A DNA stretch of 64,000 bases from Macrostomum lignano. Its lineage: Eukaryota. Every line of letters begins with the position of its first letter. The first letter of the stretch is position 1. The stretch is taken from contig NIVC01001264.1 of assembly GCA_002269645.1 (NCBI GenBank), positions 186,001 through 250,000 on the forward strand, in the 5' to 3' direction. Shown piece after piece: positions 30,610 through 52,898 of this stretch. The position numbers and the translations under genes are program-made. Under the pieces are notes generated by a model. That model did not search any database, had not been told where the DNA came from, and saw only the letters and a list, made by a program, of their open reading frames with translations.

Positions 30610-30717
30610 GGGTCTGTATAAAAGCTAGAGTATTGGACACTGGACACATTGGACACCCCTTATTTTAACAAAAGTCAAAATTTAAATGTTTTTTCTTTGC
30701 GGTAATTTTCATCTCAC

Positions 30718-33700
30718 TTACTAGACAAAGCCAAGACAAGAAAACTGCAAAAATGGTAGACTACTTAACCAGATTACTGACTCATACAACCTGCATCTAA
30801 TCAATGGTAGATCACTATCAGACACAAATGGTGAATTCACCTTTCTCTCAAAATCTGGTTCTTCTGTTATAGATCTCTGTTTCGTCTCTACCAGCTTACT
30901 CCAACACCTTAAAGACTTTAAAGTAAAGAACCACACCTACTTTAGCGACCACAACCAAATAGTGCTCTCCCGGCCTATCAAGTGAATTCACAGAGGAAAT
31001 CACAGAAACTAAACAAGCAACCAATAACTCGAAAACGAGATACAGAGTCCTAAAAAAGTCACATAAACCCAACCTGCAACAAGAAAAACATATCAATAAC
31101 TTCGCAAATGACCTGAAAAACATGCATGACAAAATCACAAATCTAGACATACAAAATCCAGCTTTTATAAATGAATTAAGTAGAAAAGTTAGACAAATTC
31201 AAAACAACATCACAGTAGAGATAAAGAACCCACTATGCTCAACACTGCCTCGCTTCCTTAAAGATTTAAGAAACGCTGCTAGACATGCCTGCAGAAGATA
31301 TAAAACCTTCCCTACTCCCAACAACCTCTCAAGCAAAGTACAACTCAAAAAAGCATACGAAAAAAAGCTCACTTCATGGAAATTTGAAACAACTCTCTGT
31401 GCAGACAACATGATCAACCAGGCCTTTATTCAAAACGATACAAAACAACTTTGGAACCTATTAAAAACACCAAATCACTCAAACAACAGAGTAACAATTG
31501 ATGAAAAATTTGTCATACACTTTCAAAATCTTGTAACTGAACAAGACAGCAGCATTAGACTATCATACGATCTTCACCTTGACAACCCTATTCTGGCTGA
31601 TTTAGAGGCTTTCAATGCCCCATTCACCAAAGAAGAAGTTATAAAACATATTAAAAAGCTCAAAACCGACAAAGCACCTGGGCACGATAAAGTATATGTA
31701 GAAACACTCAAATACCTCGAAAACGAACTTACTGACTTCCTATGCTCACTTTTCAACGAAGCACTCAAACAAGGAACCTTCCCAACTAGTTGGATTACAA
31801 ATACACTTCATCCGATTTATAAAAACAAAGGCAGCAGTGCCGACCCCAACAATTACAGAGGAATCTGCATTCAACCTCTTTTGCCAAATTTTAAATCCAG
31901 ACTCGAAAACCTAGCATACGCAAACAATCTTATATCAAAATACCAATACGGTTTCAAGCCCAATCACAGCACAATCGACCAATGTTTTAATCTTTACAAC
32001 ATTATAAACCAATCCATCTACAACAAAGAAGAACTCTTTATTGGATTTGTTGACTATGAAAAAGCCTTCGATAGCTTAAATCAACCGACCCTTTGGCACA
32101 AAACGGATAACCAGGGTATTAAAGGTCAAATGACGGAACTTATCAAGAACATGCATAAAAATGCCTGCTTCATTCTAAAAAAAGATAATGATGATGATGA
32201 AACCCAGCCAATCCCAATATTTAAAGGTGTTCTTCAAGGCAACCCTCTCTCTACCATCCTTTTTGACCTATATATTGACGACATTGTTGAATATCTTGAA
32301 CTCTCTAGCGCTAGGCGCTCTCTTACGAGATCTGCTTTCCCACTCATCCTGCTCTTTGCGGACGATCAAGCCATTCTAGCTAAAAACAAAGACGAACTTC
32401 AAGACACATTTACGACTATGGAAAATTACTGCAAGCAAAATTACTTGAAAGTAAACGCAAGCAAAACAAAGTTTATGCAGGGCAATACCAGACAAAAAAA
32501 CGATACAGAAAGCATTGCTACAAAAATATACTACGACAACCAAGAAATAGAGGAAGTAAATGAATTTAAATACCTGGGAATTATTTTTGAACCAAAAAAC
32601 AGCTTTAAAAAATGTATTGAATACCAAACTAAGCAGGGATATACAGCCATGTTTTCCCTACTCCATAGGGTAACGAATACGTCCCTAGACATCACACTCA
32701 TTCGCAGACTATTCGACGCGCTTGTTACCCCCGTTATCACTTACGGCTGTGAGCTCTGGGGCCCTCTGGCTACCATGTCTGACACAAAAGCTATTGATAA
32801 TATTCAGCTGAAATTCTACAAATATCTCCTCAATCTACCAAAATTTGCTAGCAACAGTGTGATATCATCAGAACTTGAGCTTACTCCAATCTCCCAACGA
32901 ATTGCTAAAACCTATCTTACCTACTGGCTGAAGATTAGACATCAAAAACTTTGCCAAACGACACTAGAAATTTTCTACTCAAACACCAGCCAAAAAAATC
33001 CATGGAAAACAAATATACTAAAGAAACTGGAAAGTATAGACTTAAAAGCACTAACTGAAGATAAACTTTCCCAAAGCTTTAATAACGAGAAATACCTAGT
33101 GAAAAAGCACCTCAAGATACACAGAGAAAGAGAACTTAGCCAAAAGCTAGAGAATCAGCAACATATTAAACTCTACAAAAACGCCTATCTCTACAAAAAA
33201 ATCTGCAGGCCCGACCTTTCAGATTACTTTCCATGCACTTTTAGAAACAAAAAATTCCTAACAACCCTCCTAAAACTGAAATGCGAAATTACACCCAACA
33301 TTTTCTCTCATGAAGCATGTAGACTGAGTGGAGCGAGAAATGGTTCCGATATCCTACACTACTTGACCGAATGTCCACAAACCGCAAAGATCAGAAAAAA
33401 ATACTTCTGTCAGTACCTCTTAAATGACAAGCAAGTACACAAGTTAGGATATGCTACAAATGAAAAAAGAGTCAGAAAAGAGCTCACTGGTGTAGCTAAA
33501 ATATATGAAGTCATGAATAGCTAAAACAGTTATGCAAACTGAAACAGACATATCAGCAGTGTAATAAATCCGCTTTTCATTTGTTTTATTCATTTACTGC
33601 CTTTTTAATTTCCTATTTAATTAGCATTTAATTAGTATTTAATTAGTTTGCTATTTAATACCTATTTAAATCGTCGTTATTCGCTAAACGTAAAGTTCTT

Positions 33701-34264
33701 TCGAAGTTCGTTTTTGTTCATTTTTCGTTCGTTTTTCACGCTTTGAAATATTGCGCGCTTGCAAAATACTACATGATCTTTTTACAAAAAACGCTCTTTC
33801 AAATACCTTAATAATTTTACAAATATCGTAACTCGTGTAAAAATTTAACCTTTTGAACAAATTTAACCTTTTGAACTTAATCGTAATTAAACAACTAATG
33901 CTAAAATATCTTAAATACACAGAAATATACTGGCCAAACAGGCTTCTTGCCTGAGCCAACTTACTACTACTTACAAAAAAAACTCTAGACGCTCTTTCAA
34001 ATACCTTACTTTTACAAATATCGTAACTCGCATCGTAACTCGTGTAAAAATTTAACCTTTTGAACAAATACTAAATACATCGGATGATACTGGCAAAACA
34101 GGCTCAATAAGCCTGAGCCAAATTTACTACTACTGCTACTAAAATTTTGCCGTAATAAAAATATTTAACCTTGTGAACAAATACTAAATACCTAAGGTAC
34201 ATCGTATAATACTGACAAAACAGGCTCCTTGCCTGAGCCAAATTTACTACTACTACTACTTACT
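30718..34264 (+). mobile_element. 5'-truncated LINE (CR1/L2-group-like) with a triplicated 3' end and (CTA)n tail
   Basis: APE C-terminus (NGRLL, GEFTF, SVIDL, SDH) at ~30750-30985; RT ORF; three CAGGC-loop-GCCTG-AGCCAA-(CTA)n modules. Confidence 0.85.
31122..33524 (+). CDS. LINE ORF2 reverse transcriptase region (800 aa open; frameshifted from the APE part)
   Basis: KAPGHD, NYRGI, QYGFKPNHST, FVDYEKAFDS, GVLQGNPLS, LFADD, FKYLG and C-terminal HYLTEC motifs. Confidence 0.93.
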   Translation: MHDKITNLDIQNPAFINELSRKVRQIQNNITVEIKNPLCSTLPRFLKDLRNAARHACRRYKTFPTPNNLSSKVQLKKAYEKKLTSWKFETTLCADNMINQAFIQNDTKQLWNLLKTPNHSNNRVTIDEKFVIHFQNLVTEQDSSIRLSYDLHLDNPILADLEAFNAPFTKEEVIKHIKKLKTDKAPGHDKVYVETLKYLENELTDFLCSLFNEALKQGTFPTSWITNTLHPIYKNKGSSADPNNYRGICIQPLLPNFKSRLENLAYANNLISKYQYGFKPNHSTIDQCFNLYNIINQSIYNKEELFIGFVDYEKAFDSLNQPTLWHKTDNQGIKGQMTELIKNMHKNACFILKKDNDDDETQPIPIFKGVLQGNPLSTILFDLYIDDIVEYLELSSARRSLTRSAFPLILLFADDQAILAKNKDELQDTFTTMENYCKQNYLKVNASKTKFMQGNTRQKNDTESIATKIYYDNQEIEEVNEFKYLGIIFEPKNSFKKCIEYQTKQGYTAMFSLLHRVTNTSLDITLIRRLFDALVTPVITYGCELWGPLATMSDTKAIDNIQLKFYKYLLNLPKFASNSVISSELELTPISQRIAKTYLTYWLKIRHQKLCQTTLEIFYSNTSQKNPWKTNILKKLESIDLKALTEDKLSQSFNNEKYLVKKHLKIHRERELSQKLENQQHIKLYKNAYLYKKICRPDLSDYFPCTFRNKKFLTTLLKLKCEITPNIFSHEACRLSGARNGSDILHYLTECPQTAKIRKKYFCQYLLNDKQVHKLGYATNEKRVRKELTGVAKIYEVMNS

Positions 34265-37084: not shown

Positions 37085-37536
37085 ATGGAGCAGTACCTGG
37101 CCTGTCTAGAGCAGTTCTGGTCAAACACAGACCAAAATTTGCTAATAGATTTTGCTCTACCAAATTGCCTATTAACTGAACCATGCGTCCTAGGCATTGA
37201 CGAAGCTGGCAGAGGGCCAGTCCTTGGTCCCATGGTCTATGCTTGCGCTATTGGTCCACTGGAATCTGGCGAACCCCGCCTAAAGACTGTTGGCTTTGCC
37301 GATTCCAAGACGCTGACTGAGGAGCAGAGAGAGTCGCTGTTTGAGGCTGTAAACACGCCGCCTCTGTGCGATCAGTTTGGCTATTTTGTCAGTGCGCTGA
37401 GTCCGCACTATCTAACTAGCAATATGCTGGATTTGCCCAAAACTAATCTCAATACAATGTCTATGGACGCTGCTGTTGGATTAGTGCAACGGGCTATTGA
37501 TAGAGGAGTGCGACTGCAGCAAATCAAAGTTGATAC
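37085..37536 (+). CDS. RNASEH2A: Ribonuclease H2 subunit A, exon 1 up to the MITE insertion
   Basis: LGIDEAGRGPVLGPMVY, GFADSKTLTE, NLNTMSMD and IKVD motifs (catalytic D, E, D). Confidence 0.95.
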
Positions 37537-37815
37537 CCTGATTGCAGCGCATGGGCATTTTGGCGGACGGCGTCCGGCGCGGGTCTAATATGGCACGGCG
37601 CGGCGCGTACGGCGCGCGGCAATTAGTACGGCGCGGCGCGGTACTAATTAGATGCCGAGGCATTTAGGCTTGATAAGACAGTTATAGTTACTCCTGCCGT
37701 TTACCCAAAACTGCATTAATTTTGCTTTAGGGTTTCTTTCACAGGTAAGTCATTTCACAGCGTGGCGCAGGTTGTGTAGGCGTCTGGCGTACTTAAGCCA
37801 TGCGCTGCAATAGGG
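37537..37815. mobile_element. 279-bp MITE inserted in the RNASEH2A coding exon
   Basis: TIR CC(TG/CT)ATTGCAGCGCATGG; direct repeat GTTGATAC at 37529-37536 and 37816-37823 (7 bp if the terminal C belongs to the element). Confidence 0.88.
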
Positions 37816-37823
37816 GTTGATAC

Positions 37824-37847
37824 TGTTGGCAAACCAGAGGCCTATAG
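37824..37847 (+). CDS. RNASEH2A: RNASEH2A exon 1 remainder after the MITE
   Basis: (VDT)VGKPEAYR, then donor GTAAGT at 37848. Confidence 0.85.
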   Translation, partial: CWQTRGL

Positions 37848-37954
37848 GTAAGTTGATGTCAATGCTTTTTGGATGTTTAGTTGTATTGCATCCCTATATG
37901 AATGTGTATTTTAAGCTTCATCTTCCCTATAAATATTCCTAACATCCTCAATTT

Positions 37955-38665
37955 CGCCTTAGATTCACCCTTAGATCCCAAATCTCACCCTCAGATCCAA
38001 ATCTCACCCTCGGATCCACATCTCACTCTTGGATTTCCTATTTCACTCTCAGATTCCAAATCTCGCACTCCTATCCGAATCTCACTCTCAAATCCAAATT
38101 TCACCCTCAGATCTCCAATCTCACCCTCTGATCCCAAATCTTACCCTCTGATCCCAAATCTCACCCTTAGATCCAAATCTCGCCCTCTGATCCCAAATCT
38201 CACCCTCTGATCCCAAATCTCACCCTCAGATCCAAATCTCGCCCTCTGATCCAAATCTCACCCTTGGATTTGCTATTTCACTCTCAGATCCCAAATCTCG
38301 CACTCCTATCCAAATCTCACTCTCAGATCCAAATTTCACCCTCAGATCTCCAATCTCACCCTCTGATCACAAATCTCACCATCTGATCCCAAATCTCACC
38401 CTTAGATCTAAATTTCGCCCTCTGATCCCAAATCTCACCCTCTGATCCCAAATCTCACCCTCAGATCCAAATCTCGCCCTCTGATCCCAAATCTCATCCT
38501 TAAATCCAAATCTCACCCTCAGATACAAATCTCACCCTCGGATCTTTAATCTCACCCTCAGATCCAAATCTCGCCCTCTGATCCCAAATCTCACCCTTAA
38601 ATCCAAATCTCACCCTCAGATACAAATCTCACCCTCGGATCTTCAATCTCACCCTTGGATCTTCT
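37955..38665. repeat. ~19-20-bp degenerate tandem repeat (CCAAATCTCACCCTCAGAT) in the RNASEH2A intron
   Basis: Direct inspection. Confidence 0.9.
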
Positions 38666-38816
38666 TATTCTCAGATCCTGTAACTTTAGATCCCAAAGTG
38701 TTAGTTCGAGCTAAGCGAATTATACATTCAATAGTATCTCCGGTATCTGTTCCAGATAATCTATAATGATAATTGATTACTTAAGTTGATGCTTTCTTCT
38801 TTTAACTAAATTTCAG

Positions 38817-38916
38817 ACAAAAGTTGCTGCAAATTTTTCCTCACCTGGATGTAATCGTTGAGAGCAAGGCCGATTTGAACCATCCAATTGTGTCGGCCGC
38901 GAGTGTCTGCGCTAAG
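38817..38916 (+). CDS. RNASEH2A: RNASEH2A exon 2
   Basis: Acceptor TTTCAG; QKLLQIFPHLDVIVESKADLNHPIVSAASVCAK; donor GTTAGT. Confidence 0.92.
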
Positions 38917-39024: not shown

Positions 39025-39465
39025 GTGACTCGCGATCGGCTGCTGCGCGGCTGGCGCTATAGGGAGAATCTGATCCCGGCGCCGCCACATGACCAGTGCG
39101 GCAGCGGCTACCCGGCCGAGCCAGCGACAAAGGCCTATCTGCGATCGGTCATCGACCCGGTGTTCGGCTTCCCCCAGCTGGTGCGCATGTCCTGGTCAAC
39201 AGCCGCCGTGCTCATGGAGAAGCACTGCGTCCCGCTGCGCTGGCCTGACGATGATGAAGAGGAGACTGGAAAGGGCAGCGGCGGGTCGTCTAGGAAGCGG
39301 CGGAGTCTGGCCCCGGCTGAGGCCGCTGCCTCCGTTCAGATGATGAAGCACTTTGCTCAGCGGGTGACTCCTACTGAGCAGCAGCAGCGGAGTCGGCTGC
39401 GGAGGCAGCTGCTGAACTGCGAGTTCTTTGCCAAGCACCAGCTGGCCTGGGTGACTGAGCTGTAG
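39025..39465 (+). CDS. RNASEH2A: RNASEH2A exon 3
   Basis: Acceptor CCAG; VTRD..GSGYP..DPVFGFPQLVRMSWST; stop TAG. Confidence 0.92.
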   Translation: MTRDRLLRGWRYRENLIPAPPHDQCGSGYPAEPATKAYLRSVIDPVFGFPQLVRMSWSTAAVLMEKHCVPLRWPDDDEEETGKGSGGSSRKRRSLAPAEAAASVQMMKHFAQRVTPTEQQQRSRLRRQLLNCEFFAKHQLAWVTEL

Positions 39466-39910
39466 CCTAATGGGGGAATTGTGCGCCAAGCACCAGCTGG
39501 CCAGGGTGACTGAGCTGTAGCCTAATGGGGGAATTGTGCGCCAAGCACCAGCTGGCCAGGGTGACTGAGCTGTAGCCTAATGGGGGAATTGTGCGCCAAG
39601 CACCAGCTGGCCAGGGTGACTGAGCTGTAGCCTAATGGGGGAATTGTGCGCCAAGCACCAGCTGGCCAGGGTGACTGAGCTGTAGCCTAATGGGGGAATT
39701 GTGCGCCAAGCACCAGCTGGCCTGGGTGACTGAGCTGTAGCCTAATGGGGGAATTGTGCGCCAAGCACCAGCTGGCCAGGGTGACTGAGCTGTAGCCTAA
39801 TGGGGGAATTGTGCGCCAAGCACCAGCTGGCCAGGGTGACTGAGCTGTAGCCTAATGGGGGAATTGTGCGCCAAGCACCAGCTGGCCAGGGTGACTGAGC
39901 TGTAGCCTAA
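39431..39910 (+). repeat. 55-bp tandem repeat (~8.7 copies) containing the last codons and stop codon of RNASEH2A
   Basis: CCAAGCACCAGCTGGCC units at 39431, 39486, 39541 and onward. Confidence 0.96.
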
Positions 39911-40349
39911 TTTAAGATTTTTCATCTATTTTTGTAAGCTTTGTTAGTACTTAATGTACAAATAAAATTGTGGTCTTGCTGTAGTTTTATGCCATAAGCG
40001 TATTTGACTTGTAGTATGCATATATATATTTGCTTAGTTTATTTTTTATCAATAATGAAATGCATTTTAAAATAAACTTTGATAAAGCGCATCAACTAAA
40101 ATGCTTGAAATTTTCTAACTTTATCGATCGTCTGTAATCTGTAAATAATATATATTAATTAGTTGTTTACCTATTTGTTACTTTTCCGCCGAATTCATAA
40201 AATTTAATAAAAATCGCTGCTTACTTACTATATGTAGTTTCTTGGCTGCTGAAAGTTAAACAAGCTTAAGAATGCAGAAATTAATACAAATGGAAATTGC
40301 GCTGAAATTGAAATTCTATTTGGTAGGTATGAAAAAATTGAACATGAAC

Positions 40350-40480
40350 TTTGGCACCGCAGGCACTCATTTTGACGCCACAGGCACTCATTTTGGCGCC
40401 GCAGGCACTCATTTTGGCGCCGCAGGCACTCATTTTGGCGCCACAGGCACTCATTTTGGCGCCGCATGCAGGCACTCATC
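40350..40480. repeat. 21-bp tandem repeat (TTTGGCGCCGCAGGCACTCAT), ~6 copies
   Basis: Direct inspection. Confidence 0.92.
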
Positions 40481-42844: not shown

Positions 42845-43035
42845 GTAGTTGCCAACTACAAGGTAGTACCTTGTTTACGTAAGTTCTACGTAAAAATAAA
42901 ACCCATGCCATGCGCTCCACATGTGCTTTCCATTCTCTCCATTGGCTGAAGTTATAAGGTAGTACCTTGTAGTTGCCAACTACAAGGTACTACCTTGTAG
43001 TTGGCAACTACATGCAACTGCCGGGTATATAAACA
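42845..43035 (+). promoter_or_regulatory. Palindrome cluster plus TATA box upstream of the first Maverick gene
   Basis: 41-bp palindrome at 42956-42996, GTAGTTG-N-CAACTAC at 42845 and 42997, reverse CCAAT at ~42941, TATATAAA at ~43025. Confidence 0.65.
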
Positions 43036-43108
43036 GCCGATTCACACCGCACCTCGCCCCGCCTCGACTCGCCCTGCCTCGCCTAGCCTCACCTTGCTCT
43101 CTTCTGTC

Positions 43109-43398
43109 ATGAATTCGAAGGCGAAACAGCAGCCGACAAAAATTATCGATACAATTAAAAGTATCAGTAGCAAAGACATCGCAAGCACGGCTGTCGCGAT
43201 TACCGCCATTAACGAAGAGGAGCGGGCCTCACTGTTTGAATGCTTGCAAAAAATCGATCGTGAATCGTTGAAAAAAGAGAAATCCGACGAGGCCAAGCGC
43301 TCCAGTAATGACAAGGAGCGCCGAGAGGCACGCTTCATAGCGCGTCTAAAAGAGAGTCTCAAAAAAATTAAAAATGAGCAGATCGACATCAAGACGCG
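43109..43398 (+). CDS. Maverick orphan gene, exon 1 (charged helical region)
   Basis: ATG 43109 (MNSKAK); donor CG|GTAAGT at 43399. Confidence 0.75.
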
Positions 43399-43536
43399 GT
43401 AAGTTTTTTTTGCTTATTCTATTATTTGCAATCCTTGACTTGGTTAAAACGTGATTTAAATTACTTAAGGTTTTTATGATTTCTAGAAAGCGAAACATAT
43501 TTTACATTATGATTCCGTGTTATTGCTTTTTTTTAG

Positions 43537-43987
43537 TTTCTACAACGCTAAAGCGTTATGCTTGGCCGACGTTCAAACGGATGTGGACGGAATGTTGACG
43601 CAGTTCGCCAGTTTAGAGTCCTTCATTGGGGACTTGGAGGTGCTCACCTGTCTGGCGAGAAAAAAGCAGGCGGAGATCCTCGCGTCTATTAAGACCCAAG
43701 GTCTCTCAACAGAAGGAGCCGCCAAGCGACTGGACATCGACCCCAAGTTCGCCGAACGACTGTACACCTTCCACGGGTTCATCAGGAAGTACCCAAATTT
43801 AGTCTTCTCCGGGTACTCGTTCGAGTCGCTGCTCACATACAAAAGAGCGATCGAGAAAGAGGCGGAGCAGGACGACAACTTCTGCTGCAAGTTGGAGACT
43901 GATATTGCCATCGTGTTTGAAGGAGAGAACGAGGACGCCTTGCTGGAGGAGACTACGATGGAGTTGGCGACTGCATCAGTCGACTAA
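43537..43987 (+). CDS. Maverick orphan gene, exon 2 (HTH-like segment, acidic tail)
   Basis: Acceptor T-rich TTTTAG 43535-43536, in phase with exon 1; STEGAAKRLDIDPKFAERLY; acidic C-terminus. Confidence 0.75.
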
Positions 43988-44039
43988 GCCAAGGATGAAT
44001 AAACTAAACAAATTGTAACGTAAAAAAATTAATCCTGTT

Positions 44040-44910
44040 ATTTTACCTTGAAAACTAGTTTACATTGATAAAATCCTGGAAAAAAATCCTGGAGATCCAG
44101 GAAAGTGTTTAGAGGACTACTATGAGTAGTTTACATTGATAAAATCCTAGAAAAAAATCCTGGAAAAAAATCCTGGAGATCCAGGAAAGTGTTAGAAGAC
44201 TACTATGAGTAGTTTACATTGATAAAATCCTGGAAAAAAATCCTGGAAAAAAATCCTGGAGATCCAGGAAAGTGTTTAGAAAACTACTATTAGTAGCTTA
44301 CATTGATAAAATCCTGGAAAAAAATCCTGGAAAAAAATCCTGGAGATCCAGGAAAGTGTTTAGAGGACTACTATGAGTAGTTTACATTGATAAAATCCTG
44401 GAAAAAAATCCTGGAAAAAAATCCTGGAGATCCAGGAAAGTGTTTAGAATTTTTTTCGAAGCTAAGCCTACTCGTAGTGTTTTCAATGTAATAATAACTG
44501 GATGAATTAACTAAGCAAATTATTATAAGTAACTTTGAACAACTTTGTATTAATGTTTTTTTGTTTATTAACATAAAATAAAATATTTAACCATGCTCTT
44601 CACTTATTAAAATTAAAAAAATAATCCTGTTATTTTACCCTGAAAACTACTATGAGCGGCTTACATTGATAAAATCCTGGATAAAATCCTGGAAAAAAAA
44701 TCCTGGAAAAAAATCCTGGAGATCCAGGAAAGTGTTTAGAACTTTTTTCGAAGCTAAGCCTACTCATAGTAGTTTTCAATGAAATAATAACTGAATGAAT
44801 TAACTAAGCAAATTATTATATGTAACTTTGAACAACTTTGTATTAATTTTTTTTTGTTTATTAACATAAAATAAAATATTTAACCAAGCTCTTCACTTAT
44901 TACAATTTAA
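44040..44910. repeat. Internal non-coding repeat region of the Maverick (TCCTGGA modules with the palindrome TCCTGGAGATCCAGGA; ~300-bp duplication)
   Basis: About 7 copies of TTACATTGATAAAATCCTGG..TCCTGGAGATCCAGGAAAGTG. Confidence 0.9.
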
Positions 44911-44944
44911 TATCGATGAGTCTTTTTTTTAAATCCTTTCCGAC

Positions 44945-45433
44945 TCAAGCGTCTCTCTCTATCCCCATATCTTTCAGCAGTCTTCCTAGTTCCTCGTTTG
45001 GAGCACACAAAATAAACCCTGTTCCCGAGCACCCCGTGCACCCGCCCTCTCTCCCCAAACACCCGCCCTCGGCGTACACCCCCAACCCCAGTTTTGTCTT
45101 ACTAAAAATAACAGCTTTAACTAGCTTCCGAGCGATCGACTCACGAAATCCGCTTGAAGCCCCTATATTGTCGAGTCTCCTGAGCATTTCTTTGTCCCAA
45201 CGATTCTTCTCCTCAGGAAAATCTCTATACTTAACGTCGTGCCACATGCAGACAGAGTCTAGCTCGTTCACAGGCTCATGCCCAGGATGTGGATTATTGT
45301 TTTTATCTAGCTGTATTTCAAGTGGATTCAAAGGCCCGCAATATTTATAGCCGGGAAGTGTCCAGCCTTTGTTTGGATGAGGAAGCTTTTCTATCAGTCC
45401 ATGTGAATCTATTTTACCACCAGAGCGCTGCAT
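44945..45433 (-). CDS. Parvovirus-type phospholipase A2 protein (162 aa)
   Basis: LPGYKYCGPLN Ca-loop-like motif and PVNELDSVCMWHDVKY (HD dyad) followed by D; likely ATG at 45433. Confidence 0.88.
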   Translation of the reverse strand: MQRSGGKIDSHGLIEKLPHPNKGWTLPGYKYCGPLNPLEIQLDKNNNPHPGHEPVNELDSVCMWHDVKYRDFPEEKNRWDKEMLRRLDNIGASSGFRESIARKLVKAVIFSKTKLGLGVYAEGGCLGREGGCTGCSGTGFILCAPNEELGRLLKDMGIERDA

Positions 45434-45463
45434 TATTTTATTTAAAATTTTCTTTTTAAATAA

Positions 45464-46459
45464 ATGACAGATCAGAAACTTAAAAAACTCTACTACAGCG
45501 ACAAAGGTTTCTTTGTAGGCAAAAATGCCGTTAGTAAACTCATGGAGCTGAGTAAGGAACCAAAAGCTACAGTAGAAAAATGGCTCTCTAAGCAGGCTCT
45601 CTTTCAAGTCTATTTCCCACCAGTAAAATTTACAAGACCTCACTTTAGCATCTATAAACCTAATGAAGCGCACCAAGCAGATCTTTTGTTTCTCCCCAAC
45701 GACTCAGGCTACAAGTATGCTCTTACAATTACAGACGTTGCCTCCAGATATAAGGAAGCGAGACCGCTTAAGACGAAGAAGTCAGAAGCAGTTGCAGCCG
45801 CCCTCCAAGATATTTATAAAAACTCTCCGCTCACATACCCCCAAATCTTTATGACGGACCCGGGTAAAGAATTCTTTGGGGCAGTGAAATCACTTCTACA
45901 TAAGTATGACGCAAAAATTCGCTATGGCAGAACTGAGCTCCACAGAGACCAGGCTTTTGTGGAAAGATTCAATCTAACTCTAGCCAAGAGACTATTCACT
46001 AAGCAGACAGCTGAAGAGCTGAAACTAAAAGGTGGTCAGTACTATACCAAGTGGACAGACCGGCTCCCCACTGTTATAGAGCAACTGAACAATGAAGTCA
46101 CACGCATGACTGGATTGAAACCATCCCATGCAATTAAACAAGACACTGTCGAACTTAAGTCATCTCATAGAACAGACACCTCGAACTACCCTAAGCTTCC
46201 AGGAGTTGAATCACCATACATACTGACAAACTCTGAGTTTCTACGCTTTTTATATCTACCTGGAGAGCTAGAGAAGGACACCAAAAGAAGAGCTACAGAT
46301 CCATACTTCAGCCTTGATGTACATAAAATAGACAGACATTTTACCTCCGACTCCGGTGACTATTACTTTTTATCTCAGGCCTTTAACCCTAAATCCCCCA
46401 CGCGGTCATTCACTAGAGCTGAACTCCTAGTGATACCAGCTGACACGGAAATTAATTAA
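45464..46459 (+). CDS. Retroviral-like (RVE) integrase
   Basis: HQADLLFL, TITDVASRY, MTDPGKEF and FVERFN (D,D,E); intact 331 aa. Confidence 0.95.
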   Translation: MTDQKLKKLYYSDKGFFVGKNAVSKLMELSKEPKATVEKWLSKQALFQVYFPPVKFTRPHFSIYKPNEAHQADLLFLPNDSGYKYALTITDVASRYKEARPLKTKKSEAVAAALQDIYKNSPLTYPQIFMTDPGKEFFGAVKSLLHKYDAKIRYGRTELHRDQAFVERFNLTLAKRLFTKQTAEELKLKGGQYYTKWTDRLPTVIEQLNNEVTRMTGLKPSHAIKQDTVELKSSHRTDTSNYPKLPGVESPYILTNSEFLRFLYLPGELEKDTKRRATDPYFSLDVHKIDRHFTSDSGDYYFLSQAFNPKSPTRSFTRAELLVIPADTEIN

Positions 46460-46475
46460 AATATTAAAATAAAAA

Positions 46476-46922
46476 ATGACAAAGATTGAAACTAGAACCC
46501 TCAATAAACTCAATAAAATCATTGAATCAAAGAAACCAGGTCTTATATCAATTAAAGGTGCCAAAGTAAAAGTCGATCCCGTGCAGCAAATAGTTCAGTG
46601 TAATGAGCAAAGACACAGCATCACAGATGAAAAGTCAGGAGGAATCCTACCATTAGCAGCTCTTATTCCGATCATTGCAGGCGCTGTAAGTGCCGCAGGT
46701 GGTGTAGCTGGAGGTGTAGCAACTGCTGTTAAAGCTGGTAATGATAGAGCCCACCAGCTGGAATTGCAAAAGATTGCAAGAGATAAAGGTATAACAATTA
46801 AGGCAGGAGAGGGCTGCCCGGATTTTGATGATTGTGAGCATGAAAATTCTGTAAGCAAGTCTGACATTGTCAAAGCCATCATGACATTGCACAATGCTGG
46901 GTTTACAATAATGCGTATGTGA
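46476..46922 (+). CDS. Adenovirus pX-like virion protein
   Basis: GGILPLAALIPIIAGAVSAAGGVAGGVA resembles the adenovirus pX C-terminus GGILPLLIPLIAAAIGAVPGIA. Confidence 0.65.
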   Translation: MTKIETRTLNKLNKIIESKKPGLISIKGAKVKVDPVQQIVQCNEQRHSITDEKSGGILPLAALIPIIAGAVSAAGGVAGGVATAVKAGNDRAHQLELQKIARDKGITIKAGEGCPDFDDCEHENSVSKSDIVKAIMTLHNAGFTIMRM

Positions 46923-47006
46923 TGAGGTTTTAAACCCCACGTTATCCAGCTTCATAAACCTAACGCTACTTATAGGATGTAGAAACAGTTCAACTTTTCT
47001 ATCAGG

Positions 47007-50000
47007 GTGGTCACCCTCAAAAATTTTTTTATATTTTCGAGAAAAATGCCAAAAGCCAATCCAGCAAGAGATTTAGTCAACAAATATTTTTCGTCTCATT
47101 TACCCTACCCTACAACCTTACAAGGCGTCTCATTTCAAGAAAAAAGTAATTTACTAAGAGAAGCATGTAAACAAAAGTTTAACACCGACCCCGGTCACCT
47201 GGGAAGCTATGAAAAACAGTTGGAAATCATCAAACAATTAGAATCCAACCAGTATGCGCCTATACAAAATCCTGCAAAGGAACACCAAGAGAGGAGTCGC
47301 AACTTAGTTAACAAATATGAAACTCTCACTGGTGAAAAAGCAAAGTACCCACAAAATAAGCAGGAACAAGAGAAATTAGAGCAATTAATCCATTTAAAAG
47401 AGTCGGAGCTTGCCATTGAAGAGATTAATTTTGCACAGAGGAAGTTTACAGAACATTACATAGAGTACACGATCCCAATTAACGGCACCAACGGTACCAC
47501 CGCAAATATCTACGACTATAAAGACAGCATCCAATCAGTTGTTGATCACACACTCAAAACACGCAAGACCTTTAAACTACAGATATCATTTAAGATTGCA
47601 TTTTATATGCCTGCAAAACCCACTGAGCATCTCGAGTATTACATGACAACAAAGGCAAAGCCATTCACCCCTACAGACACACTGGATTCTTTCCTTCAAG
47701 ATGTCACTAAGAAAATTGAAGCGTTTACATCCAGAGGTTCCGGATGGGTCGTAGGGGGGATTCAAAGAGCGACTGTCATGGTCATGAAATATGACCCACT
47801 TAAAGCCTCCTCTTATATAGAGCTCCCGCATAAGCTAGCCGGTAAAAAAGCTTGCATAAATGTTAAAAATAAAGACAATTGCTGTGCTCTATGGGCAGTT
47901 CTTTCTGCACTTCTTTATGATAGTGTCCCTCACCACCCCGAAAGAACCTCAAATTATCAAAATTATTTCAAGGACTATCTCATCGAATGCGAAAAGAAGG
48001 GAATCAGGTTTGACAAAGGAGGCTTGGCGATCTCTCAGATCCCAAAGCTAGAAGAAGTGTTTAATAACAAAATTAGAATCACAGTCTTTGAGTGGAGTGA
48101 AAAAACTGAGAAAGTTCAACCGGTCAGATGTAGCAAAGACGTTTTAGATCCCGAGGGGAAAAGGCGGACTGAAGTGGATCTTCTAGTGATTGGTAATTTA
48201 CTAGAGGAGGCTCACTATGTTTGGATTAAAGATCACGATTAATCATCACGAGGCTGTTGCCATCTGCCGCTTGTGCCTTAAGCATTACAGTGGACCTGAA
48301 CGCTTTGAAAAGCTAACAGAGCATGAATTATCATGCGAGGATCACCCGACAAACTGCTCTCTTCCTTCAGCTGAAGAGAAGTATCTCCGTTTTAAGAACT
48401 ATCACAAGATGGAGAAGCTCCCATTTGTTGTATATGCTGATTTCGAATGCTCAATCGTGCCAGAGACTCAAAAACAAACTCATACTCAAAAACAAACTCA
48501 AACTCAAAAACATGTCCCCAACTCAGTAGCATATGCCTTTATTACTACAAAAGGACTTGTTGAGTATAATTATTTCTTTGGAGAGCAGTGTGTGGAGCAG
48601 TTTATTGCCAGAATGTTAGAGCTGCAAAAAGTGATTAGCACCCTTCAACCTGTTCCAATAAGTATGTCTGAGGAGGATGAAAGCAATTTCCTATCAGCAA
48701 CTCATTGCCACATCTGCAGGAAACATTTAACTTGCACTGATTTTAAAAACCCCACCGTTAGGGACCACTGCCACTTTACTGGGAAATTTAGAGGCGCAGC
48801 GCATAACACCTGTAATTTAAAGCTAAAATCGAACATTCATGATCTAACGATATTTTGTCACAACGCAAAGAACTATGACATGCATTTAATAGTTGAAAAA
48901 ATCGGCATGATTCCAGACATACACCTTGATTGCATCGCAGAGAACAAGGAGAAGTTTAAGTGTGTTGATATTAAACAGGATAATTCGGGTACAGGTAAAA
49001 TAAGACTGAAGGATTCATATCAATTTCTAGCTGCCAGTCTAGACGAACTAAGCAAGAATCTAAAAGATGAACAATGTACATATACAAAGATATTTGCAAG
49101 TCAAATTAACAACAGTGATGAATCATTTAAACTTTTAAGAAAGAAAGGCTTCTACCCCTATGAAAATATTACTGGGTATCACGTATTTGAAGATGGTTTA
49201 CCACCACAAGAAAAGTTCTTTTCAAAGCTAACAACTCTGGAATCTCTGACAAAGACTATGAGCACGCGAAGCATGTCTATAATTACTTTAATTGTCAAAA
49301 CTTTTTCCAGTATCACCTGCTTTACCTCTACACAGATGTGTTTCTGCTGGCCGATGTGTTTGAAACCTTCAGAGACACCTGGTACACAGCATATGGCCTC
49401 GATCCAGCACATTATGTGTCTCTCCCTGCCACTAGCTGGGAATCTTTGCTTAAAATGAAATGGGATCAAGATCCAGATTGGTACATTGAACTTCTTACAG
49501 ACATTGACATGTACAATTTTGTCGAATCGTCAAAGCGAGGGGGATCTCAATTTGCGTTAACAGGTATGCAAAAGCAAACAATCCCTACATTGAATCTTAC
49601 AATAAGGAGCAGCCCTCAAACTACATTACTTACTTGGACGCTAATAATCTCTACGGGTGGGCGATGAGTCAAGATCTTCCAGTTAGAGATTTTCGATGGT
49701 TACCCTCATCAGAATTCAAATGGGACTTTTCATTGGCTGCCATTTATGAGGTTGATGTTTACATTCCACCAGAGCTTCACGATTATTTCTCTGACTTTCC
49801 ACCCTTCCCAGAGAACATCAAGTGCCCGAAAATAATCGAAACTCCCAATGATAATAATGGAACTTGGCGCTTGTCAGGAACAGAAAAAGAACATACAGAG
49901 AAACTAACACAGAATCTAAACAACAAGACACGTTACAAAATCCATTACAAACTGCTTAAGTATTTTATCTCACAGGGTTGCAGGGTCACCAAAGTTCACA

Positions 50001-50912
50001 GGGCTCTTACATTTACAGAGGAAGCGTGGATGAAACCCTACATTGATAAGAACACCCAGTTTAGGACCAAAGCAACCAACGACTTTGACAAGAACCTCTT
50101 TAAGTTAGCCAACAACTCCGTCTATGGCAAGACTCTTGAGAATGAGAGGAAAAGAACAAACCTGAAACTTGTTACCTCATCAGAGCCTGCTGTTATTCAG
50201 GCAAATATGTCAAAGCCAACGTTCAAAGAACTCCATATCTTTAATAGCTACTTAGGTGTGATCATATTTTACAAAACCAAGGTGACGCTGCGCAAGCCGA
50301 TCTATACAGGTGTCACTGTACTCGACGAATCAAAACGTCTGATGTATCAGTTCTTCTATGGCATGAAGCAGCAGTACAAGGATAAAATGAAACTTTTGTA
50401 CACTGACACAGACAGTTTTATTATGGACATTCAAACAGAAGACATTTATCAGGACATGCTGCAGCAAAAAGATTTTTTTTGACTTGTCTGAGTATGATGA
50501 GTCTTTCAGGACACAGAATGGCGATCAAGTGTTTGACGCTACTAACAAGAAAGTGATTGGGAAAATGAAGGACGAGATTGCTGGTGACATAATCACTGAA
50601 TTCATTGGGTTGAGAGCAAAGTCCTATTTTGTAAAATGTGAGTCGTCAGACCCAATTAAAAAATCAAAGGGAATTCCGAAACGTGTGGTTAGGAAGGAAC
50701 TTAATGAAGCTGAATACAGAGACGCCTTGAATTGTAACAAAAAGACATCACATGAGTTCTCAAAGCTACAATCTAAAAACCATATTATTCACACAATTCA
50801 GCAAAAGAAGATTGGATTGTCAGGTGCAGATAACAAGAGATTCATTTTTGATGACAATATCAACAGTCTGCCGTTCGGGCACTGGAGATTAGGTTTAGGA
50901 GGTGGAGATTAG
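47007..50912 (+). CDS. Protein-primed family B DNA polymerase (4 frameshifts in this assembly)
   Basis: Exo I VYADFE, Exo II HNAKNYD, Pol DANNLYG, KLANNSVYGK and YTDTDS; breaks at ~48235, ~49230, ~49540 and ~50478; probable ATG 47046. Confidence 0.95.
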
Positions 50913-50985
50913 GCTTAGGAGGTTGGGTTTAGGAGGTTGAGATTGGGTTTAGGTTTAAGAGAAAGTTTAATAAACCTCATAAAAA

Positions 50986-51387
50986 ATGACAACAAATAAC
51001 TTTCTTGAAGATTTGGCTAATGAACTGGAAATCCCAAACTTTAGAGGAATATTTATGAGGGACACTCTGCCTGATTTTCCTCTAAGAAAAGAATGCGGCA
51101 TCATGAACTTTGACAGCACTGATAAGCCAGGATCTCATTGGGTTTGCTGGGTGATTGATCCCGATCGCAAGCACAAGTGTTATTACTTCGATAGCTATGG
51201 GACGGCAGTACCAGAAGAGCTAAGAAATTATATGAAGGGAAAAAAGAATAAAAAAATTTATCGCTCAGACTTTATTCTCCAAGGTCTTAGCAGTGATATT
51301 TGTGGTGAGCTGTGCATGACTGTTTTGTATGCAATGACCAAAACACGAAAGACCTACAAGGAAATTATTCTTGGCTGTGTTTCATAG
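50986..51387 (+). CDS. Adenain/Ulp1-like cysteine maturation protease
   Basis: GSHWVC (H), YFDSYG (D) and LQGLSSDICG (Q, C); intact 133 aa. Confidence 0.93.
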   Translation: MTTNNFLEDLANELEIPNFRGIFMRDTLPDFPLRKECGIMNFDSTDKPGSHWVCWVIDPDRKHKCYYFDSYGTAVPEELRNYMKGKKNKKIYRSDFILQGLSSDICGELCMTVLYAMTKTRKTYKEIILGCVS

Positions 51388-51430
51388 GGGTTCATTGTGC
51401 ATTTCTTGCCGACTTTCTTTCCGCATAATG

Positions 51431-52045
51431 TTAAAGAACTTTCTCGAGTTCATTTCTCAGCTGACTCATGTCATCAGTACCGACCATGTTCAAGTTCATT
51501 CGAATTGATTGTTCATAAAGATCCTGAATGGTTTTGAACTCATCCTCTGAAATGAACTTATCCTCGATTGCCCTTGAAATGTACCCTATGATTGAAGTGT
51601 GCACCCCTTTCTCTTTTACTTGCTTCTCCTGTAGCTGCTTTAGTTTTTTTCGCCTGTTTCGCGCTAATGCTCCAGTAATTGCTGAAATAAGTCCACACGC
51701 AGCACCCACAGAGCCGAGCGGAATTGCGATTGGGGCTGTGATGACTGGCAACGTTGAGACAGCTGCAGCAGATCCAGATAGAACAGACACAGATCCTAGA
51801 ATCATATTGCTGTAGTCGAAAAATTTACAGTGGCTGTCATAGCGCTTAATTTTCTTTGTGTTGTGGAAAATATTTTTTTCAAGATCATCACGCATTTTTT
51901 GAATCTCCACCAGTCGAAACTGTTGAGAGTTACAAGTAATGACGGGGTAGAGTTTTTGTTGCTCATATTGAGGTGCACTAGGTGCTGTGGGAGCTGTGGG
52001 TGTTGTGGGAGCGTTCGGATCATAAAGAGAATTTTGAGCATCCAT
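51431..52045 (-). CDS. Maverick PW-type conserved helical/membrane protein
   Basis: FRLVEI, central hydrophobic hairpin and ISRAIEDKFISEDEF motif. Confidence 0.75.
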   Translation of the reverse strand: MDAQNSLYDPNAPTTPTAPTAPSAPQYEQQKLYPVITCNSQQFRLVEIQKMRDDLEKNIFHNTKKIKRYDSHCKFFDYSNMILGSVSVLSGSAAAVSTLPVITAPIAIPLGSVGAACGLISAITGALARNRRKKLKQLQEKQVKEKGVHTSIIGYISRAIEDKFISEDEFKTIQDLYEQSIRMNLNMVGTDDMSQLRNELEKVL

Positions 52046-52154
52046 TTTTTAGGAAATTTTTAAAAAAAAATCGACAACTAGTTGGTGGTGTTAGATTTGT
52101 TTTACGGTTGATTGCTTCGTCTGCAGTCACGGCAACGGGTCTCTTCGAATTTGC

Positions 52155-52898
52155 CTATTCATTGTCTGTGAGCTCCATTCTACGTCTGATCTCAAACAAG
52201 TCGGTTGGATCACTTATTTCCCTTGTGGTCTGTGGTGCCTCTTCAGCGTCAATGTTTTTGAGATTATGCAAGCGTTCAAGACGACCGATTCTTCTCACCG
52301 ATTTCTGCCATTCGGTAAAAACTAAATCTACAAAGACTTTATTTGCAGTAATTCTTACTTTGATTTGATCATGCAACGCTGTTGACTGAGTCATGAACTC
52401 TTCTAAATTCCTCACTTTACATGTGTTGGTTGCGATGTTTTCTTTAATTCTATCATGCAACGCTGTTGACTGGTTCATGAACTCTTCTAAATTCCTCACT
52501 TTAACTGTGTTTGTGAAAACTCCTTCTTCAAGAATGCGCATCCGTCTATCAGTGGAATTTCTCAGAAGATTAATTGTCGATGCTAAATTTGTTCTTAAGC
52601 CGTTGATTTGCGAGACTGCCGAAGTTATTTCTGACCTAAGTTCATTAGTTGCGTGTACAACCTGTACATAAAGCTTATCACTTTCAAACTTCTGCCAGGC
52701 TACTTTTATGCGGAGATCTTCTATGTTTATCTGTAGCTGGTGCATGGAGCGCTCTAATTGTTTCAGTCTGTTTTTATTCAGTTTGATCTCTGGGATCTTT
52801 TCGTCGCTGTTGATATATCGCCTGTCAAGGATGGATATCTGAGCTGATGTAAGAGCGCTGTTGCCAGAAATGGATTCACCTGCAAAGTTTATCGACAT
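52155..52898 (-). CDS. Coiled-coil protein with an internal ~28-aa duplication (fibre/spike-like candidate)
   Basis: Heptad-rich; NT.KVRNLEEFM.QSTALHD.IK appears twice. Confidence 0.7.
   Translation of the reverse strand: MSINFAGESISGNSALTSAQISILDRRYINSDEKIPEIKLNKNRLKQLERSMHQLQINIEDLRIKVAWQKFESDKLYVQVVHATNELRSEITSAVSQINGLRTNLASTINLLRNSTDRRMRILEEGVFTNTVKVRNLEEFMNQSTALHDRIKENIATNTCKVRNLEEFMTQSTALHDQIKVRITANKVFVDLVFTEWQKSVRRIGRLERLHNLKNIDAEEAPQTTREISDPTDLFEIRRRMELTDNE

What the first reader, a model, noticed from the sequence alone, without database searches (positions are those of the whole stretch)
37520..37850. MITE inserted at a catalytic Asp codon of RNASEH2A
Seen: the insertion duplicates GTTGATAC (V-D-T) in the VDTVG motif, adds 287 nt and a stop at 37586-37588; all other exons and catalytic residues are intact. 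The MITE contains a strong internal CAG|GTAAGT (37742-37750) and acceptors at 37730 and 37813, but I found no frame-restoring combination. Knowledge: RNase H2 removes genomic ribonucleotides and RNA:DNA hybrids and influences retroelement activity. Inference: a null allele or homeolog, either tolerated through genome duplication or rescued by splicing not predictable by eye; a TE hit on a TE-relevant host gene.
Basis: partly seen in the sequence, partly recalled or inferred. Interest (0 to 1): 0.7.

Follow-up and report, generated by a model that had tools for sequence, protein, structure and literature searches.

The report
Transposon-broken spare RNase H2A gene copy
One of at least two copies of the RNase H2A gene in the recently genome-duplicated flatworm Macrostomum lignano is interrupted by a small non-coding DNA transposon that adds an early stop codon, while an intact copy sits elsewhere in the same genome, so this is an ordinary early step of duplicate-gene decay.

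Summary
The window comes from Macrostomum lignano (assembly GCA_002269645.1, contig NIVC01001264.1). Exon 1 of a three-exon RNASEH2A gene carries a 279-280 nt non-coding element (37536/7-37815) with 18-20 nt terminal inverted repeats. It is flanked by a perfect GTTGATAC duplication and adds 287 nt and a TAA at 37586-88. A paralogous locus in the same assembly (NIVC01000010.1, protein PAA94431.1) has the empty site with one GTTGATAC and an intact 338-codon reading frame.

With the 287 nt removed, the window copy is also an intact frame with all four catalytic residues (D39, E40, D150, D178). The two copies differ at 16 synonymous and 7 non-synonymous codons, so the hit is recent. The species is a known neopolyploid, so "null homeolog tolerated by duplication" is supported.

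- The insertion lies two bases after the Asp codon.
- The duplication may be 7 or 8 bp.
- In-frame GT-AG combinations do exist. The ones with good sites delete the catalytic Asp, and the ones that keep it use poor sites.
- No 287-nt register is GT-AG.

New: the element's core is a decayed, antisense 28S rRNA fragment. I found no other copy, so "family" and "introner-like" remain untested. The finding is ordinary and of low interest.

The parts
37085..37536 (+). RNASEH2A exon 1, part upstream of the insertion (Met1 to the second base of Thr151). It holds catalytic D39, E40 and D150.
   Evidence: Alignment to mouse RNase H2A 3kio.
37529..37536 (+). Target-site duplication, copy 1 (GTTGATAC; the duplication may be 7 bp, GTTGATA).
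   Evidence: D10. A single copy is present in the empty paralogous site, L001 10442-10449.
37537..37815 (.). 279-nt non-coding element with terminal inverted repeats, MITE-like (280 nt from 37536 if the duplication is 7 bp). 54% GC. It folds back on itself through the inverted repeats.
   Evidence: DNA fold -62.1 kcal/mol, z=-4.05. A six-frame protein search found nothing. Absent from the paralog.
37536..37554 (+). 5' terminal inverted repeat, CCCTGATTGCAGCGCATGG.
   Evidence: (I1).
37798..37816 (-). 3' terminal inverted repeat (reverse complement CCCCTATTGCAGCGCATGG).
   Evidence: (I1).
37586..37588 (+). Premature TAA stop in the RNASEH2A frame, 16 codons into the element. The product is 167 aa and lacks D178 and the C-terminal half.
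   Evidence: The GenBank CDS P0121 ends here.
37570..37649 (.). GC-rich internal sub-repeats (GGCGCGG-type) and a 14-nt palindrome arm pair at 37621-49.
   Evidence: D3, D4, I2.
37636..37751 (-). Decayed fragment of the 28S rRNA gene inside the element (Rfam LSU_rRNA_eukarya model positions 2200-2314), antisense to RNASEH2A. The internal acceptor at 37730 lies inside it; the GTAAGT donor at 37745-50 lies in its weakly aligned 5' edge.
   Evidence: Rfam 23.5 bits, E=0.0019. My local alignment covers model positions ~2208-2314 and scores 48 against shuffles 8.5 +/- 1.2, 82/106 identical. blastn E=7e-16.
37816..37823 (+). Target-site duplication, copy 2 (GTTGATAC).
37824..37847 (+). RNASEH2A exon 1, part downstream of the insertion (..VGKPEAYR), ending at the donor AG|GTAAGT.
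37848..38816 (+). Intron 1, containing a 19-20-nt minisatellite at 37965-38655.
38817..38916 (+). RNASEH2A exon 2. It holds catalytic D178 (ESKAD).
39025..39465 (+). RNASEH2A exon 3, ending in stop TAG at 39463-65. The last codons lie in a 55-nt tandem array.

Best explanation
**What happened.** After the whole-genome duplication of Macrostomum lignano, a small non-autonomous cut-and-paste DNA transposon inserted into exon 1 of one paralogous RNASEH2A copy. The element is 279-280 nt, has 18-20 nt terminal inverted repeats, makes a 7-8 bp target duplication and has no coding capacity. It landed two bases after the codon of catalytic Asp150.

**Consequence (inferred).** The unspliced element shifts the frame and gives a stop after 16 foreign codons. 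This copy can then only make a 167-aa fragment that lacks the fourth catalytic Asp and the C-terminal half, or an mRNA open to nonsense-mediated decay. It is a young, unprocessed pseudogene or null homeolog.

**Why it is tolerated (inferred).** Enzyme function is carried by the intact paralog on contig NIVC01000010.1.

**Shown:** the insertion, its transposon anatomy, the empty paralogous site, and the integrity of the rest of the gene and of the paralog.
**Inferred:** loss of function, retention of the element in the mRNA, and compensation by the paralog.
For: - **Filled versus empty site.** The L001 alignment stops at window 37536 and resumes at 37816, and L001 10442-10449 is used twice.
- **Transposon anatomy.** Inverted repeats and duplication, with a fold-back at z=-4.05.
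- **Gene identity.** RNase H2A, with the top hit a Macrostomum lignano protein at 98% identity. The DEDD residues align to mouse D34/E35/D142/D170.
- **Rest of the gene is intact.** Removing 287 nt gives a 338-aa frame.
- **Intact paralog.** It has the same three exons, GT-AG introns and a 338-codon frame, and is annotated as PAA94431.1.
- **Recent hit.** The paralogs differ at 16 synonymous and 7 non-synonymous codons, so selection acted for most of their divergence.
- **Annotation of this copy.** The GenBank CDS is one interval, 37088-37588, ending at the element's TAA. That annotation is RNA-seq-guided (PMC5730564).
- **Second assembly.** The UniProt model P0123 from the other assembly, ML2, equals this allele spliced 37529->38823. 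So that assembly carries the obstacle too.
- **Genome background.** DV1 has three paralogous subgenomes that differ mostly by indels (PMC10733133). Other differences between the two loci are also mobile-element insertions.
Against: - No reads or transcripts could be examined. Presence in the living line, expression of this copy and its splicing are all indirect.
- Both assemblies come from the same inbred line and share PacBio data, so they are not independent.
- In-frame GT-AG options exist on paper. For example, 37529->37797 keeps VDTVG and adds six residues.
- Only one copy of the element was seen, so its mobility as a family is not demonstrated.
- A third paralog, expected from three subgenomes, was not found. 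Its state is unknown.
Confidence: 0.85

Rival explanations
1. Canonical splice rescue. The element is removed as a new GT-AG intron from cryptic sites, giving an in-frame and still active enzyme with a small insertion.
For: Enumeration finds in-frame, stop-free GT-AG pairs that keep VDTVG:
- 37529 (AAA|GTTGAT) -> 37797, adding PCAAIG.
- 37529 -> 37779, adding 12 aa.
- 37572 -> 37813.
Against: - The donors are poor. AAA|GTTGAT lacks G at -1 and the A-G at +4/+5 that all real donors of this gene share (GTAAGT, GTTAGT, GTCAGT).
- The acceptors have no pyrimidine tract.
- The good internal sites (acceptor 37730, donor 37745) give only in-frame products that delete VDTVGKPEAY, including the catalytic Asp.
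- The RNA-seq-guided GenBank CDS reads into the element.
- An insertion next to a catalytic Asp is unlikely to be neutral (inference).
Confidence: 0.05
2. Non-canonical precise excision. The element plus one duplication copy (287 nt) is removed from the RNA by a spliceosome that tolerates non-GT-AG ends brought together by the inverted repeats. This happens with MITE-derived introns of Fritillaria borealis and with euglenid nonconventional introns.
For: - The inverted repeats pair strongly in a single strand.
- Such systems exist (PMC11282704).
- The element is flanked by a duplication, as those introns are.
Against: - None of the nine 287-nt registers has GT-AG or AT-AC ends. The best is GT..GG.
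- All native introns of this gene in both paralogs are GT-AG.
- Introners were found in only two animal groups, and the paper does not mention flatworms (PMC9860276).
- No other copy of the element was seen in introns of the available sequence.
Confidence: 0.02
3. Assembly or sampling artefact. The insertion is a chimeric read or assembly error, or a rare somatic or low-frequency variant, and the germline copy is intact.
For: The genome is repeat-rich, hard to assemble and partly redundant (PMC5730564; PMC10733133). No reads were available to me.
Against: - A perfect 7-8 bp target duplication exactly flanking 18-20 nt inverted repeats is the signature of transposition, not of misassembly.
- The ML2-based protein model of the same allele skips exactly this region. 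So two different assemblers saw it.
Confidence: 0.03

Closest known systems
MITE or other non-autonomous TIR-transposon insertion alleles in exons (for example mPing- or Tourist-type insertions in plant genes; own knowledge)
   Same: Small size, terminal inverted repeats, target-site duplication, no coding capacity, and insertion into a coding exon that creates a premature stop.
   Different: Only one copy was seen here, so multi-copy family status is unproven. The superfamily is unassigned. The termini are CCCT(G)ATTG.., not the hAT YARNG motif. The core is a 28S rDNA fragment.
Loss of one homeolog after whole-genome duplication (fractionation), as described for the S/L1/L2 subgenomes of M. 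lignano (PMC10733133)
   Same: One of the duplicated copies is disabled while another stays intact. Paralogs differ mainly by insertions and deletions, and several of those between these two loci are mobile elements.
   Different: This is a single gene at the very first step, with one lesion and everything else intact. The subgenome assignment of the two contigs was not determined.
Introners: transposons that become spliceosomal introns on insertion (Micromonas, Aureococcus, dinoflagellates; PMC9860276, PMC11282704)
   Same: A short TIR/TSD element sitting inside a coding exon, with splice-like signals inside it.
   Different: No GT-AG pair removes element plus duplication. There is no evidence of many copies at intron positions. 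The annotated CDS reads into it. Flatworms are not mentioned as introner hosts in that survey (PMC9860276).
MITE-derived non-canonical introns of Fritillaria borealis (Henriet et al. 2019, cited in PMC11282704)
   Same: Inverted repeats that can bring the ends together. A duplication at the borders. Non-GT-AG ends if removal were precise.
   Different: That system needs a modified spliceosome and shows genome-wide non-canonical introns. The native introns here are GT-AG.
Mobile elements that carry or derive from rRNA gene fragments (for example Pokey of Daphnia with rDNA-derived parts, and the 28S-derived SINE28; own knowledge)
   Same: The interior of the element is about 77% identical to the conserved 28S region, model positions 2200-2314.
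   Different: Here the fragment is an internal passenger of a TIR element that inserted in a protein-coding gene, not in rDNA. No parent element is known.

Membership tests
RNase H2 catalytic subunit A (RNASEH2A, Pfam PF01351 RNase_HII) | Full-length sequence similarity to eukaryotic RNase H2A. | tested here: met
   E=2.8e-72 to mouse 3kio chain A. 5408 homologs, all PF01351, with the top hit M. lignano at 98%.
RNase H2 catalytic subunit A (RNASEH2A, Pfam PF01351 RNase_HII) | The four catalytic carboxylates (DEDD) are present. | tested here: met
   D39, E40, D150 and D178 align to mouse D34/E35/D142/D170 once the insertion is removed. In the filled allele D178 lies behind the stop.
MITE (miniature inverted-repeat transposable element) | Terminal inverted repeats. 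| tested here: met
   18 of 20 nt, or identical except one indel.
MITE (miniature inverted-repeat transposable element) | Target-site duplication, with an empty site known. | tested here: met
   GTTGATAC occurs twice here and once in paralog L001.
MITE (miniature inverted-repeat transposable element) | Short length and no coding capacity. | tested here: met
   279 nt with stops in all six frames. No protein hit at E<=10.
MITE (miniature inverted-repeat transposable element) | Many homogeneous copies in the genome. | tested here: inconclusive
   No second copy in window plus L001, 86 kb in total. None in JGI metagenomes. The host genome itself could not be searched.
hAT superfamily (as parent of the element) | 8-bp target-site duplication. 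| tested here: inconclusive
   The maximal duplication is 8 bp, but a 7-bp reading is equally consistent with the empty site.
hAT superfamily (as parent of the element) | Terminal YARNG motif, and repeats shared with a hAT transposase-bearing element. | tested here: not met
   The termini are CCTGA/CCCTA. The hAT-like ORFs at 4968-8017 show no matching termini. The YARNG rule is from my own knowledge.
Introner | Element plus one duplication copy is bounded by usable splice sites, so that splicing restores the frame. | tested here: not met
   The nine 287-nt registers give GT..GG, TT..GG, TG..GT, GA..TT, AT..TG, TA..GA, AC..AT, CC..TA and CC..AC.
Introner | Many near-identical copies at intron positions of unrelated genes. 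| not testable with these tools
   No access to the whole host genome or to its transcripts.
Unprocessed pseudogene or null homeolog | A disabling lesion in a copy that keeps its introns, with an intact paralog present. | tested here: met
   Premature stop. Introns conserved between the paralogs. Intact paralog PAA94431.1.
Unprocessed pseudogene or null homeolog | No functional product is made from the disrupted copy. | not testable with these tools
   This needs paralog-specific transcript or protein data. The only hint is the GenBank CDS that ends in the element.

The most novel reading that the evidence does not exclude
The element belongs to an undescribed flatworm family of 28S-fragment-carrying TIR elements that land in exons and are removed from pre-mRNA. 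Removal would be either precise, through its paired ends with non-canonical borders, or through its built-in acceptor and donor. That would make it a metazoan introner caught at birth, so this RNASEH2A copy would still be functional.
Probability: 0.04. Interest if true: 0.6.

Novelty: new member of a known kind. Interest (0 to 1): 0.2.

Why it matters
This is a clean, datable example of how a neopolyploid animal genome starts to lose duplicate genes. One transposon insertion sits in an otherwise perfect copy of an essential DNA-repair gene, and the untouched paralog serves as the empty-site control.

In practice it matters to people who use M. lignano as a model.
- The two RNASEH2A copies are not equivalent, so knock-out or RNAi designs must target PAA94431.1.
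- The public protein A0A1I8G2B6 is a gene-model artefact that lacks the catalytic Asp.

The 28S-derived core of the element is a small curiosity for transposon biologists. None of this changes current understanding.

Tried and rejected
1. **Other copies of the element.**
   - An inverted-repeat pattern with up to 3 mismatches in the window matched only the element itself.
   - blastn with word size 7 against window plus L001 gave chance-level hits only.
   - A paired-repeat pattern in JGI metagenome contigs found nothing.
   - A search for the repeat string in the paper library found nothing.
2. **Exonised copies in annotated proteins.** A six-frame translation searched against 5.8 billion proteins scored no hit at E<=10.
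3. **More host DNA through a multi-copy protein.** The 800-aa LINE reverse transcriptase of the window has no close relative in the protein collection (best 32% identity).
4. **A parent element in the window.** The hAT-like ORFs at 4968-8017 have no recognisable or matching inverted repeats.
5. **tRNA or other RNA origin.** No tRNA was found, and there was no Rfam gathering-level match in window plus L001. The only sub-threshold match was 28S, which I followed up and accepted.
6. **Transcripts in Logan assemblies.** The 90% cluster of this protein has only four members, none from Logan. I therefore spent no look-ups on them.
7. **Allele versus paralog.** I rejected 'allele'. The line is inbred with negligible heterozygosity (PMC10733133), whereas the loci differ by 2.4% in CDS and by kilobase indels.

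Full report
**Observation**

- GTTGATAC occurs at 37529-36 and again at 37816-23, 287 nt apart (D10).
- Just inside these copies lie inverted repeats, CCCTGATTGCAGCGCATGG at 37536-54 and its near-complement at 37798-816 (I1). In 100 shuffles of the window that pattern is expected 0.01 times, and in the real window it occurs only at these two places.
- Read from the ATG at 37085, the frame gives ...QQIKVDT, then 16 foreign residues (LIAAHGHFGGRRPARV), then TAA at 37586-88.
- The internal CAG|GTAAGT (37742-50) and the AG acceptors ending at 37730 and 37813 are also present.

**The gene**

The exons are 37085-37847, 38817-38916 and 39025-39465, with GT-AG introns. With the 287 nt taken out, they join into a 1017-nt frame of 338 aa.
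- This protein matches mouse RNase H2 subunit A (3kio) at E=2.8e-72 over residues 22-276.
- It matches thousands of metazoan RNASEH2A proteins.
- The four catalytic carboxylates are D39, E40, D150 and D178. In the alignment they fall on mouse D34, E35, D142 and D170 (the identity of the catalytic residues is from my own knowledge of the DEDD motif).
- The element sits after the second base of the Thr151 codon, two bases past the Asp150 codon (37532-34). So the duplication covers V-D-T, but the Asp codon itself is not split.

**Where the window comes from**

The best hit is a Macrostomum lignano protein at 98% identity. Its 90%-identity cluster has four members.
- **P0121** (166 aa) is the GenBank CDS of this very locus. 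It lies on NIVC01001264.1 of assembly GCA_002269645.1, as one interval corresponding to window 37088-37588, and ends at the element's TAA.
- **P0122** (PAA94431.1, BOX15_Mlig029433g1) is an intact copy on contig NIVC01000010.1 of the same assembly.
- **P0001** and **P0123** are UniProt models, evidently from the earlier ML2 assembly of the same worm line.

**The empty site**

I fetched the intact locus as L001 and compared it with the window.
- The alignment runs to window 37536, which matches L001 10449. It resumes at window 37816, which matches L001 10442.
- So eight bases of L001 (GTTGATAC) are used twice, and the 279 nt between them are absent.
- In L001 the sequence reads ...CAAATCAAAGTTGATACTGTTGGCAAACC....
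- This is the classical filled-versus-empty comparison. It shows an insertion with a target-site duplication, not a chance repeat and not a deletion in the paralog.

The L001 gene has the same three exons, GT-AG borders and a 338-codon frame.

**What the element is**

- It is 279 nt long and 54% GC, with stops in all six frames.
- A six-frame search of 5.8 billion proteins gave no hit.
- As a single strand it folds back through its inverted repeats, at -62.1 kcal/mol against -47.2 +/- 3.7 for shuffles (z=-4.05).
- Its 5' half is made of GC-rich GGCGCGG-type sub-repeats with a small palindrome (D3, D4, I2).

Its other half was a surprise. On the minus strand, 37636-37751 matches the Rfam eukaryotic large-subunit rRNA model at positions 2200-2314.
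- The Rfam score is 23.5 bits, E=0.0019. That is below the gathering score only because this is a 115-position fragment of a 3401-position model.
- My own local alignment to the consensus printed by the tool, covering model positions ~2208-2314, scores 48. Two thousand shuffles gave 8.5 +/- 1.2 with a maximum of 15. Identity is 82 of 106 positions.
- blastn gives E=7e-16.
- This is the universally conserved 28S stretch around the R2 and Pokey insertion sites (own knowledge).

So the element carries a decayed, antisense piece of the 28S gene. Where the acceptor is concerned, and probably the donor too, these signals are by-products of the captured sequence rather than features suggestive of an introner.

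By anatomy, the element is a MITE-like non-autonomous TIR transposon. Two cautions apply.
- **The duplication length is ambiguous.** If the element starts at 37536, the two repeats are identical except for one extra G, and the duplication is 7 bp (GTTGATA). If it starts at 37537, the duplication is 8 bp and the repeats have two mismatches. Both readings fit the empty site. The termini (CCTGA.../CCCTA...) do not show the hAT YARNG motif (own knowledge). I therefore leave the superfamily open; hAT, P, Merlin and Mutator-like elements all make 7-9 bp duplications.
- **Family status is unproven.** I found no second copy in the window or in L001, 86 kb in total. I also found none in JGI metagenomes or in the paper library. 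The host genome itself cannot be searched with these tools.

**Splicing**

I enumerated every GT/GC-AG and AT-AC pair that would skip the stop and keep the frame. I also enumerated two-intron models that use the strong internal donor.
- **No precise removal.** None of the nine registers that would remove exactly 287 nt has canonical ends. The best is GT..GG.
- **Good internal sites lose the Asp.** The acceptor TTTTGCTTTAG| at 37730 and the donor CAG|GTAAGT at 37745, combined with the GT at 37529, give a 14-nt mini-exon and an in-frame product. In it VDTVGKPEAY is replaced by GFFH, so the catalytic Asp is gone.
- **Combinations that keep VDTVG use poor sites.** Examples are 37529->37797 (adds PCAAIG) and 37529->37779 (adds 12 aa). 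Their donor is AAA|GTTGAT, and their acceptors have no pyrimidine tract. The real donors of this gene are GTAAGT, GTTAGT and GTCAGT.
- **P0123 is a frame-keeping model.** The UniProt model P0123 is exactly this allele spliced from 37529 to 38823, an AG seven bases inside exon 2 (identical over 325 aa). Such a model is what an ab initio predictor produces when it must step over an obstacle. It lacks VDTVGKPEAYRQK. It also shows indirectly that ML2, a different assembly of the same worm line, carries the insertion.

**Expression**

The Mlig_3_7 annotation was built from genome-guided RNA-seq assemblies, StringTie and TACO (PMC5730564). Its CDS for this locus reads straight into the element. This suggests the copy is transcribed with the element retained. 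However, reads multi-map heavily between paralogs in this genome (PMC10733133), so I treat this as a hint only. The stop lies about 260 nt upstream of the exon 1-2 junction. By the usual 50-55-nt rule (own knowledge), the mRNA would be a target of nonsense-mediated decay.

**Why it is tolerated**

- The sequenced DV1 line contains three paralogous subgenomes (S, L1, L2). They differ by about 2.2% in SNPs genome-wide, 1.1% in CDS, and about 36% when indels are counted. Heterozygosity within subgenomes is negligible (PMC10733133).
- The two RNASEH2A loci fit this picture. Flanks are 90-97% identical, broken by kilobase indels. Several of these indels are mobile-element insertions with their own target duplications, including a 3.4-kb LINE in the window that L001 lacks.
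- The CDS differ at 23 codons, 16 synonymous and 7 non-synonymous. The non-synonymous changes are all outside conserved motifs.

That ratio, the perfect duplication and the absence of any second lesion indicate two things. Both copies were under purifying selection for most of their separate history, and the insertion is recent. The annotated copy number is two in each assembly. A third copy, expected from three subgenomes, was not found and may be collapsed, unannotated or lost.

**Comparison with known things**

- **Mechanism.** This is insertional inactivation of a gene by a small TIR transposon. Its evolutionary setting is loss of one homeolog after polyploidy. Both are well known.
- **Introner test.** It fails. 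No splice-site pair removes element plus duplication. In the large survey, introners were found in only two animal groups, and that paper does not mention flatworms (PMC9860276).
- **The more exotic option.** This is removal with non-canonical ends helped by pairing of the inverted repeats, as in Fritillaria borealis or euglenids (PMC11282704). Sequence alone cannot exclude it. But all native introns here are GT-AG, and nothing points to such a system in this species.
- **The 28S passenger.** It recalls rDNA-associated elements, but I know of no described relative.

**Verdict**

- 'MITE family', 'introner-like' and 'TE hit on a TE-relevant gene' are not supported by any evidence I could obtain.
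- The finding is a new instance of a known kind and of low general interest (0.2). It has practical value for users of the M. lignano gene models.

Noticed in passing
window 37636-37751 (minus strand): The interior of the inserted element is a decayed fragment of the 28S rRNA gene (Rfam LSU model positions 2200-2314, about 77% identical to the consensus). It is the only such fragment in window plus L001.
   Followed up: yes
window ~43000-58400: A Maverick/Polinton-like virus-like element, judged by eye from ORF translations: an integrase-like ORF at 45464-46459; protein-primed DNA polymerase B in four consecutive ORFs at 47007-50912 (so interrupted); an adenain-like protease at 50986-51387; a Walker-A ATPase at 53079-53915 (-); and putative capsid ORFs at 55623-56909 and 56931-57698. 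I did not analyse, print or assemble it.
   Followed up: no
window 30707-34145: A 3.4-kb non-LTR retrotransposon insertion with an uninterrupted 800-aa reverse-transcriptase ORF (31122-33524). It is flanked by an approximately 11-bp duplication (TTTGCGGTAAT / TTTGCCGTAAT) and absent from the paralogous locus L001. The closest database proteins are only 32% identical.
   Followed up: partly
window 14900-19600: Gypsy-like LTR-retrotransposon gag-pol ORFs (protease, RT, RNase H, integrase motifs by eye). The pol is split into several ORFs, and there is a short tandem duplication (LDFIKACNMC repeated four times) in ORF 15693-16673.
   Followed up: no
window 4968-8017 (minus strand): Two ORFs (429 and 279 aa) that resemble a hAT-type transposase with its C-terminal dimerisation region. 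There are no recognisable inverted repeats around them and no similarity to the element in RNASEH2A.
   Followed up: partly
window 39430-39911: A 55-nt tandem array (8.8 copies, 99% identical) starts inside the last codons of RNASEH2A. The final ~12 residues and the stop codon are repeat-derived, and every unit carries the same TAG. The paralog has the same arrangement.
   Followed up: partly
window 37965-38655 and 40350-40470: A 19-20-nt minisatellite (about 35 copies, with 39-, 59- and 235-nt higher-order periods) fills most of RNASEH2A intron 1. A 21-nt array (5.8 copies) lies downstream of the gene.
   Followed up: no
protein models P0123 (A0A1I8G2B6) and P0001 (A0A1I8H6I6): P0123 is a frame-keeping gene model of this disrupted copy. 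It skips 13 residues, including the catalytic Asp. P0001 equals the intact paralog except for a C-terminal ...ARGD ending. One extra G in a G-run of the 55-nt repeat would explain that ending, and this is probably an uncorrected long-read indel.
   Followed up: partly
GenBank CDS P0121 (window 37088-37588) and P0122 (L001 10001-12011): Both deposited CDS start at codon 2, although an ATG directly precedes them in the DNA. This looks like a systematic off-by-one-codon or 'partial' flag in the submission.
   Followed up: no
L001 1367-2123 and 6789-8154: Two insertions present in the intact paralog's flank and absent from the window. One is about 757 nt with a 6-bp duplication (CAGATT). The other is about 1.37 kb with a 10-bp duplication (GCTTCTAGCC) and an (ACTT)n tail, so it is probably a retroposon.
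   Followed up: partly
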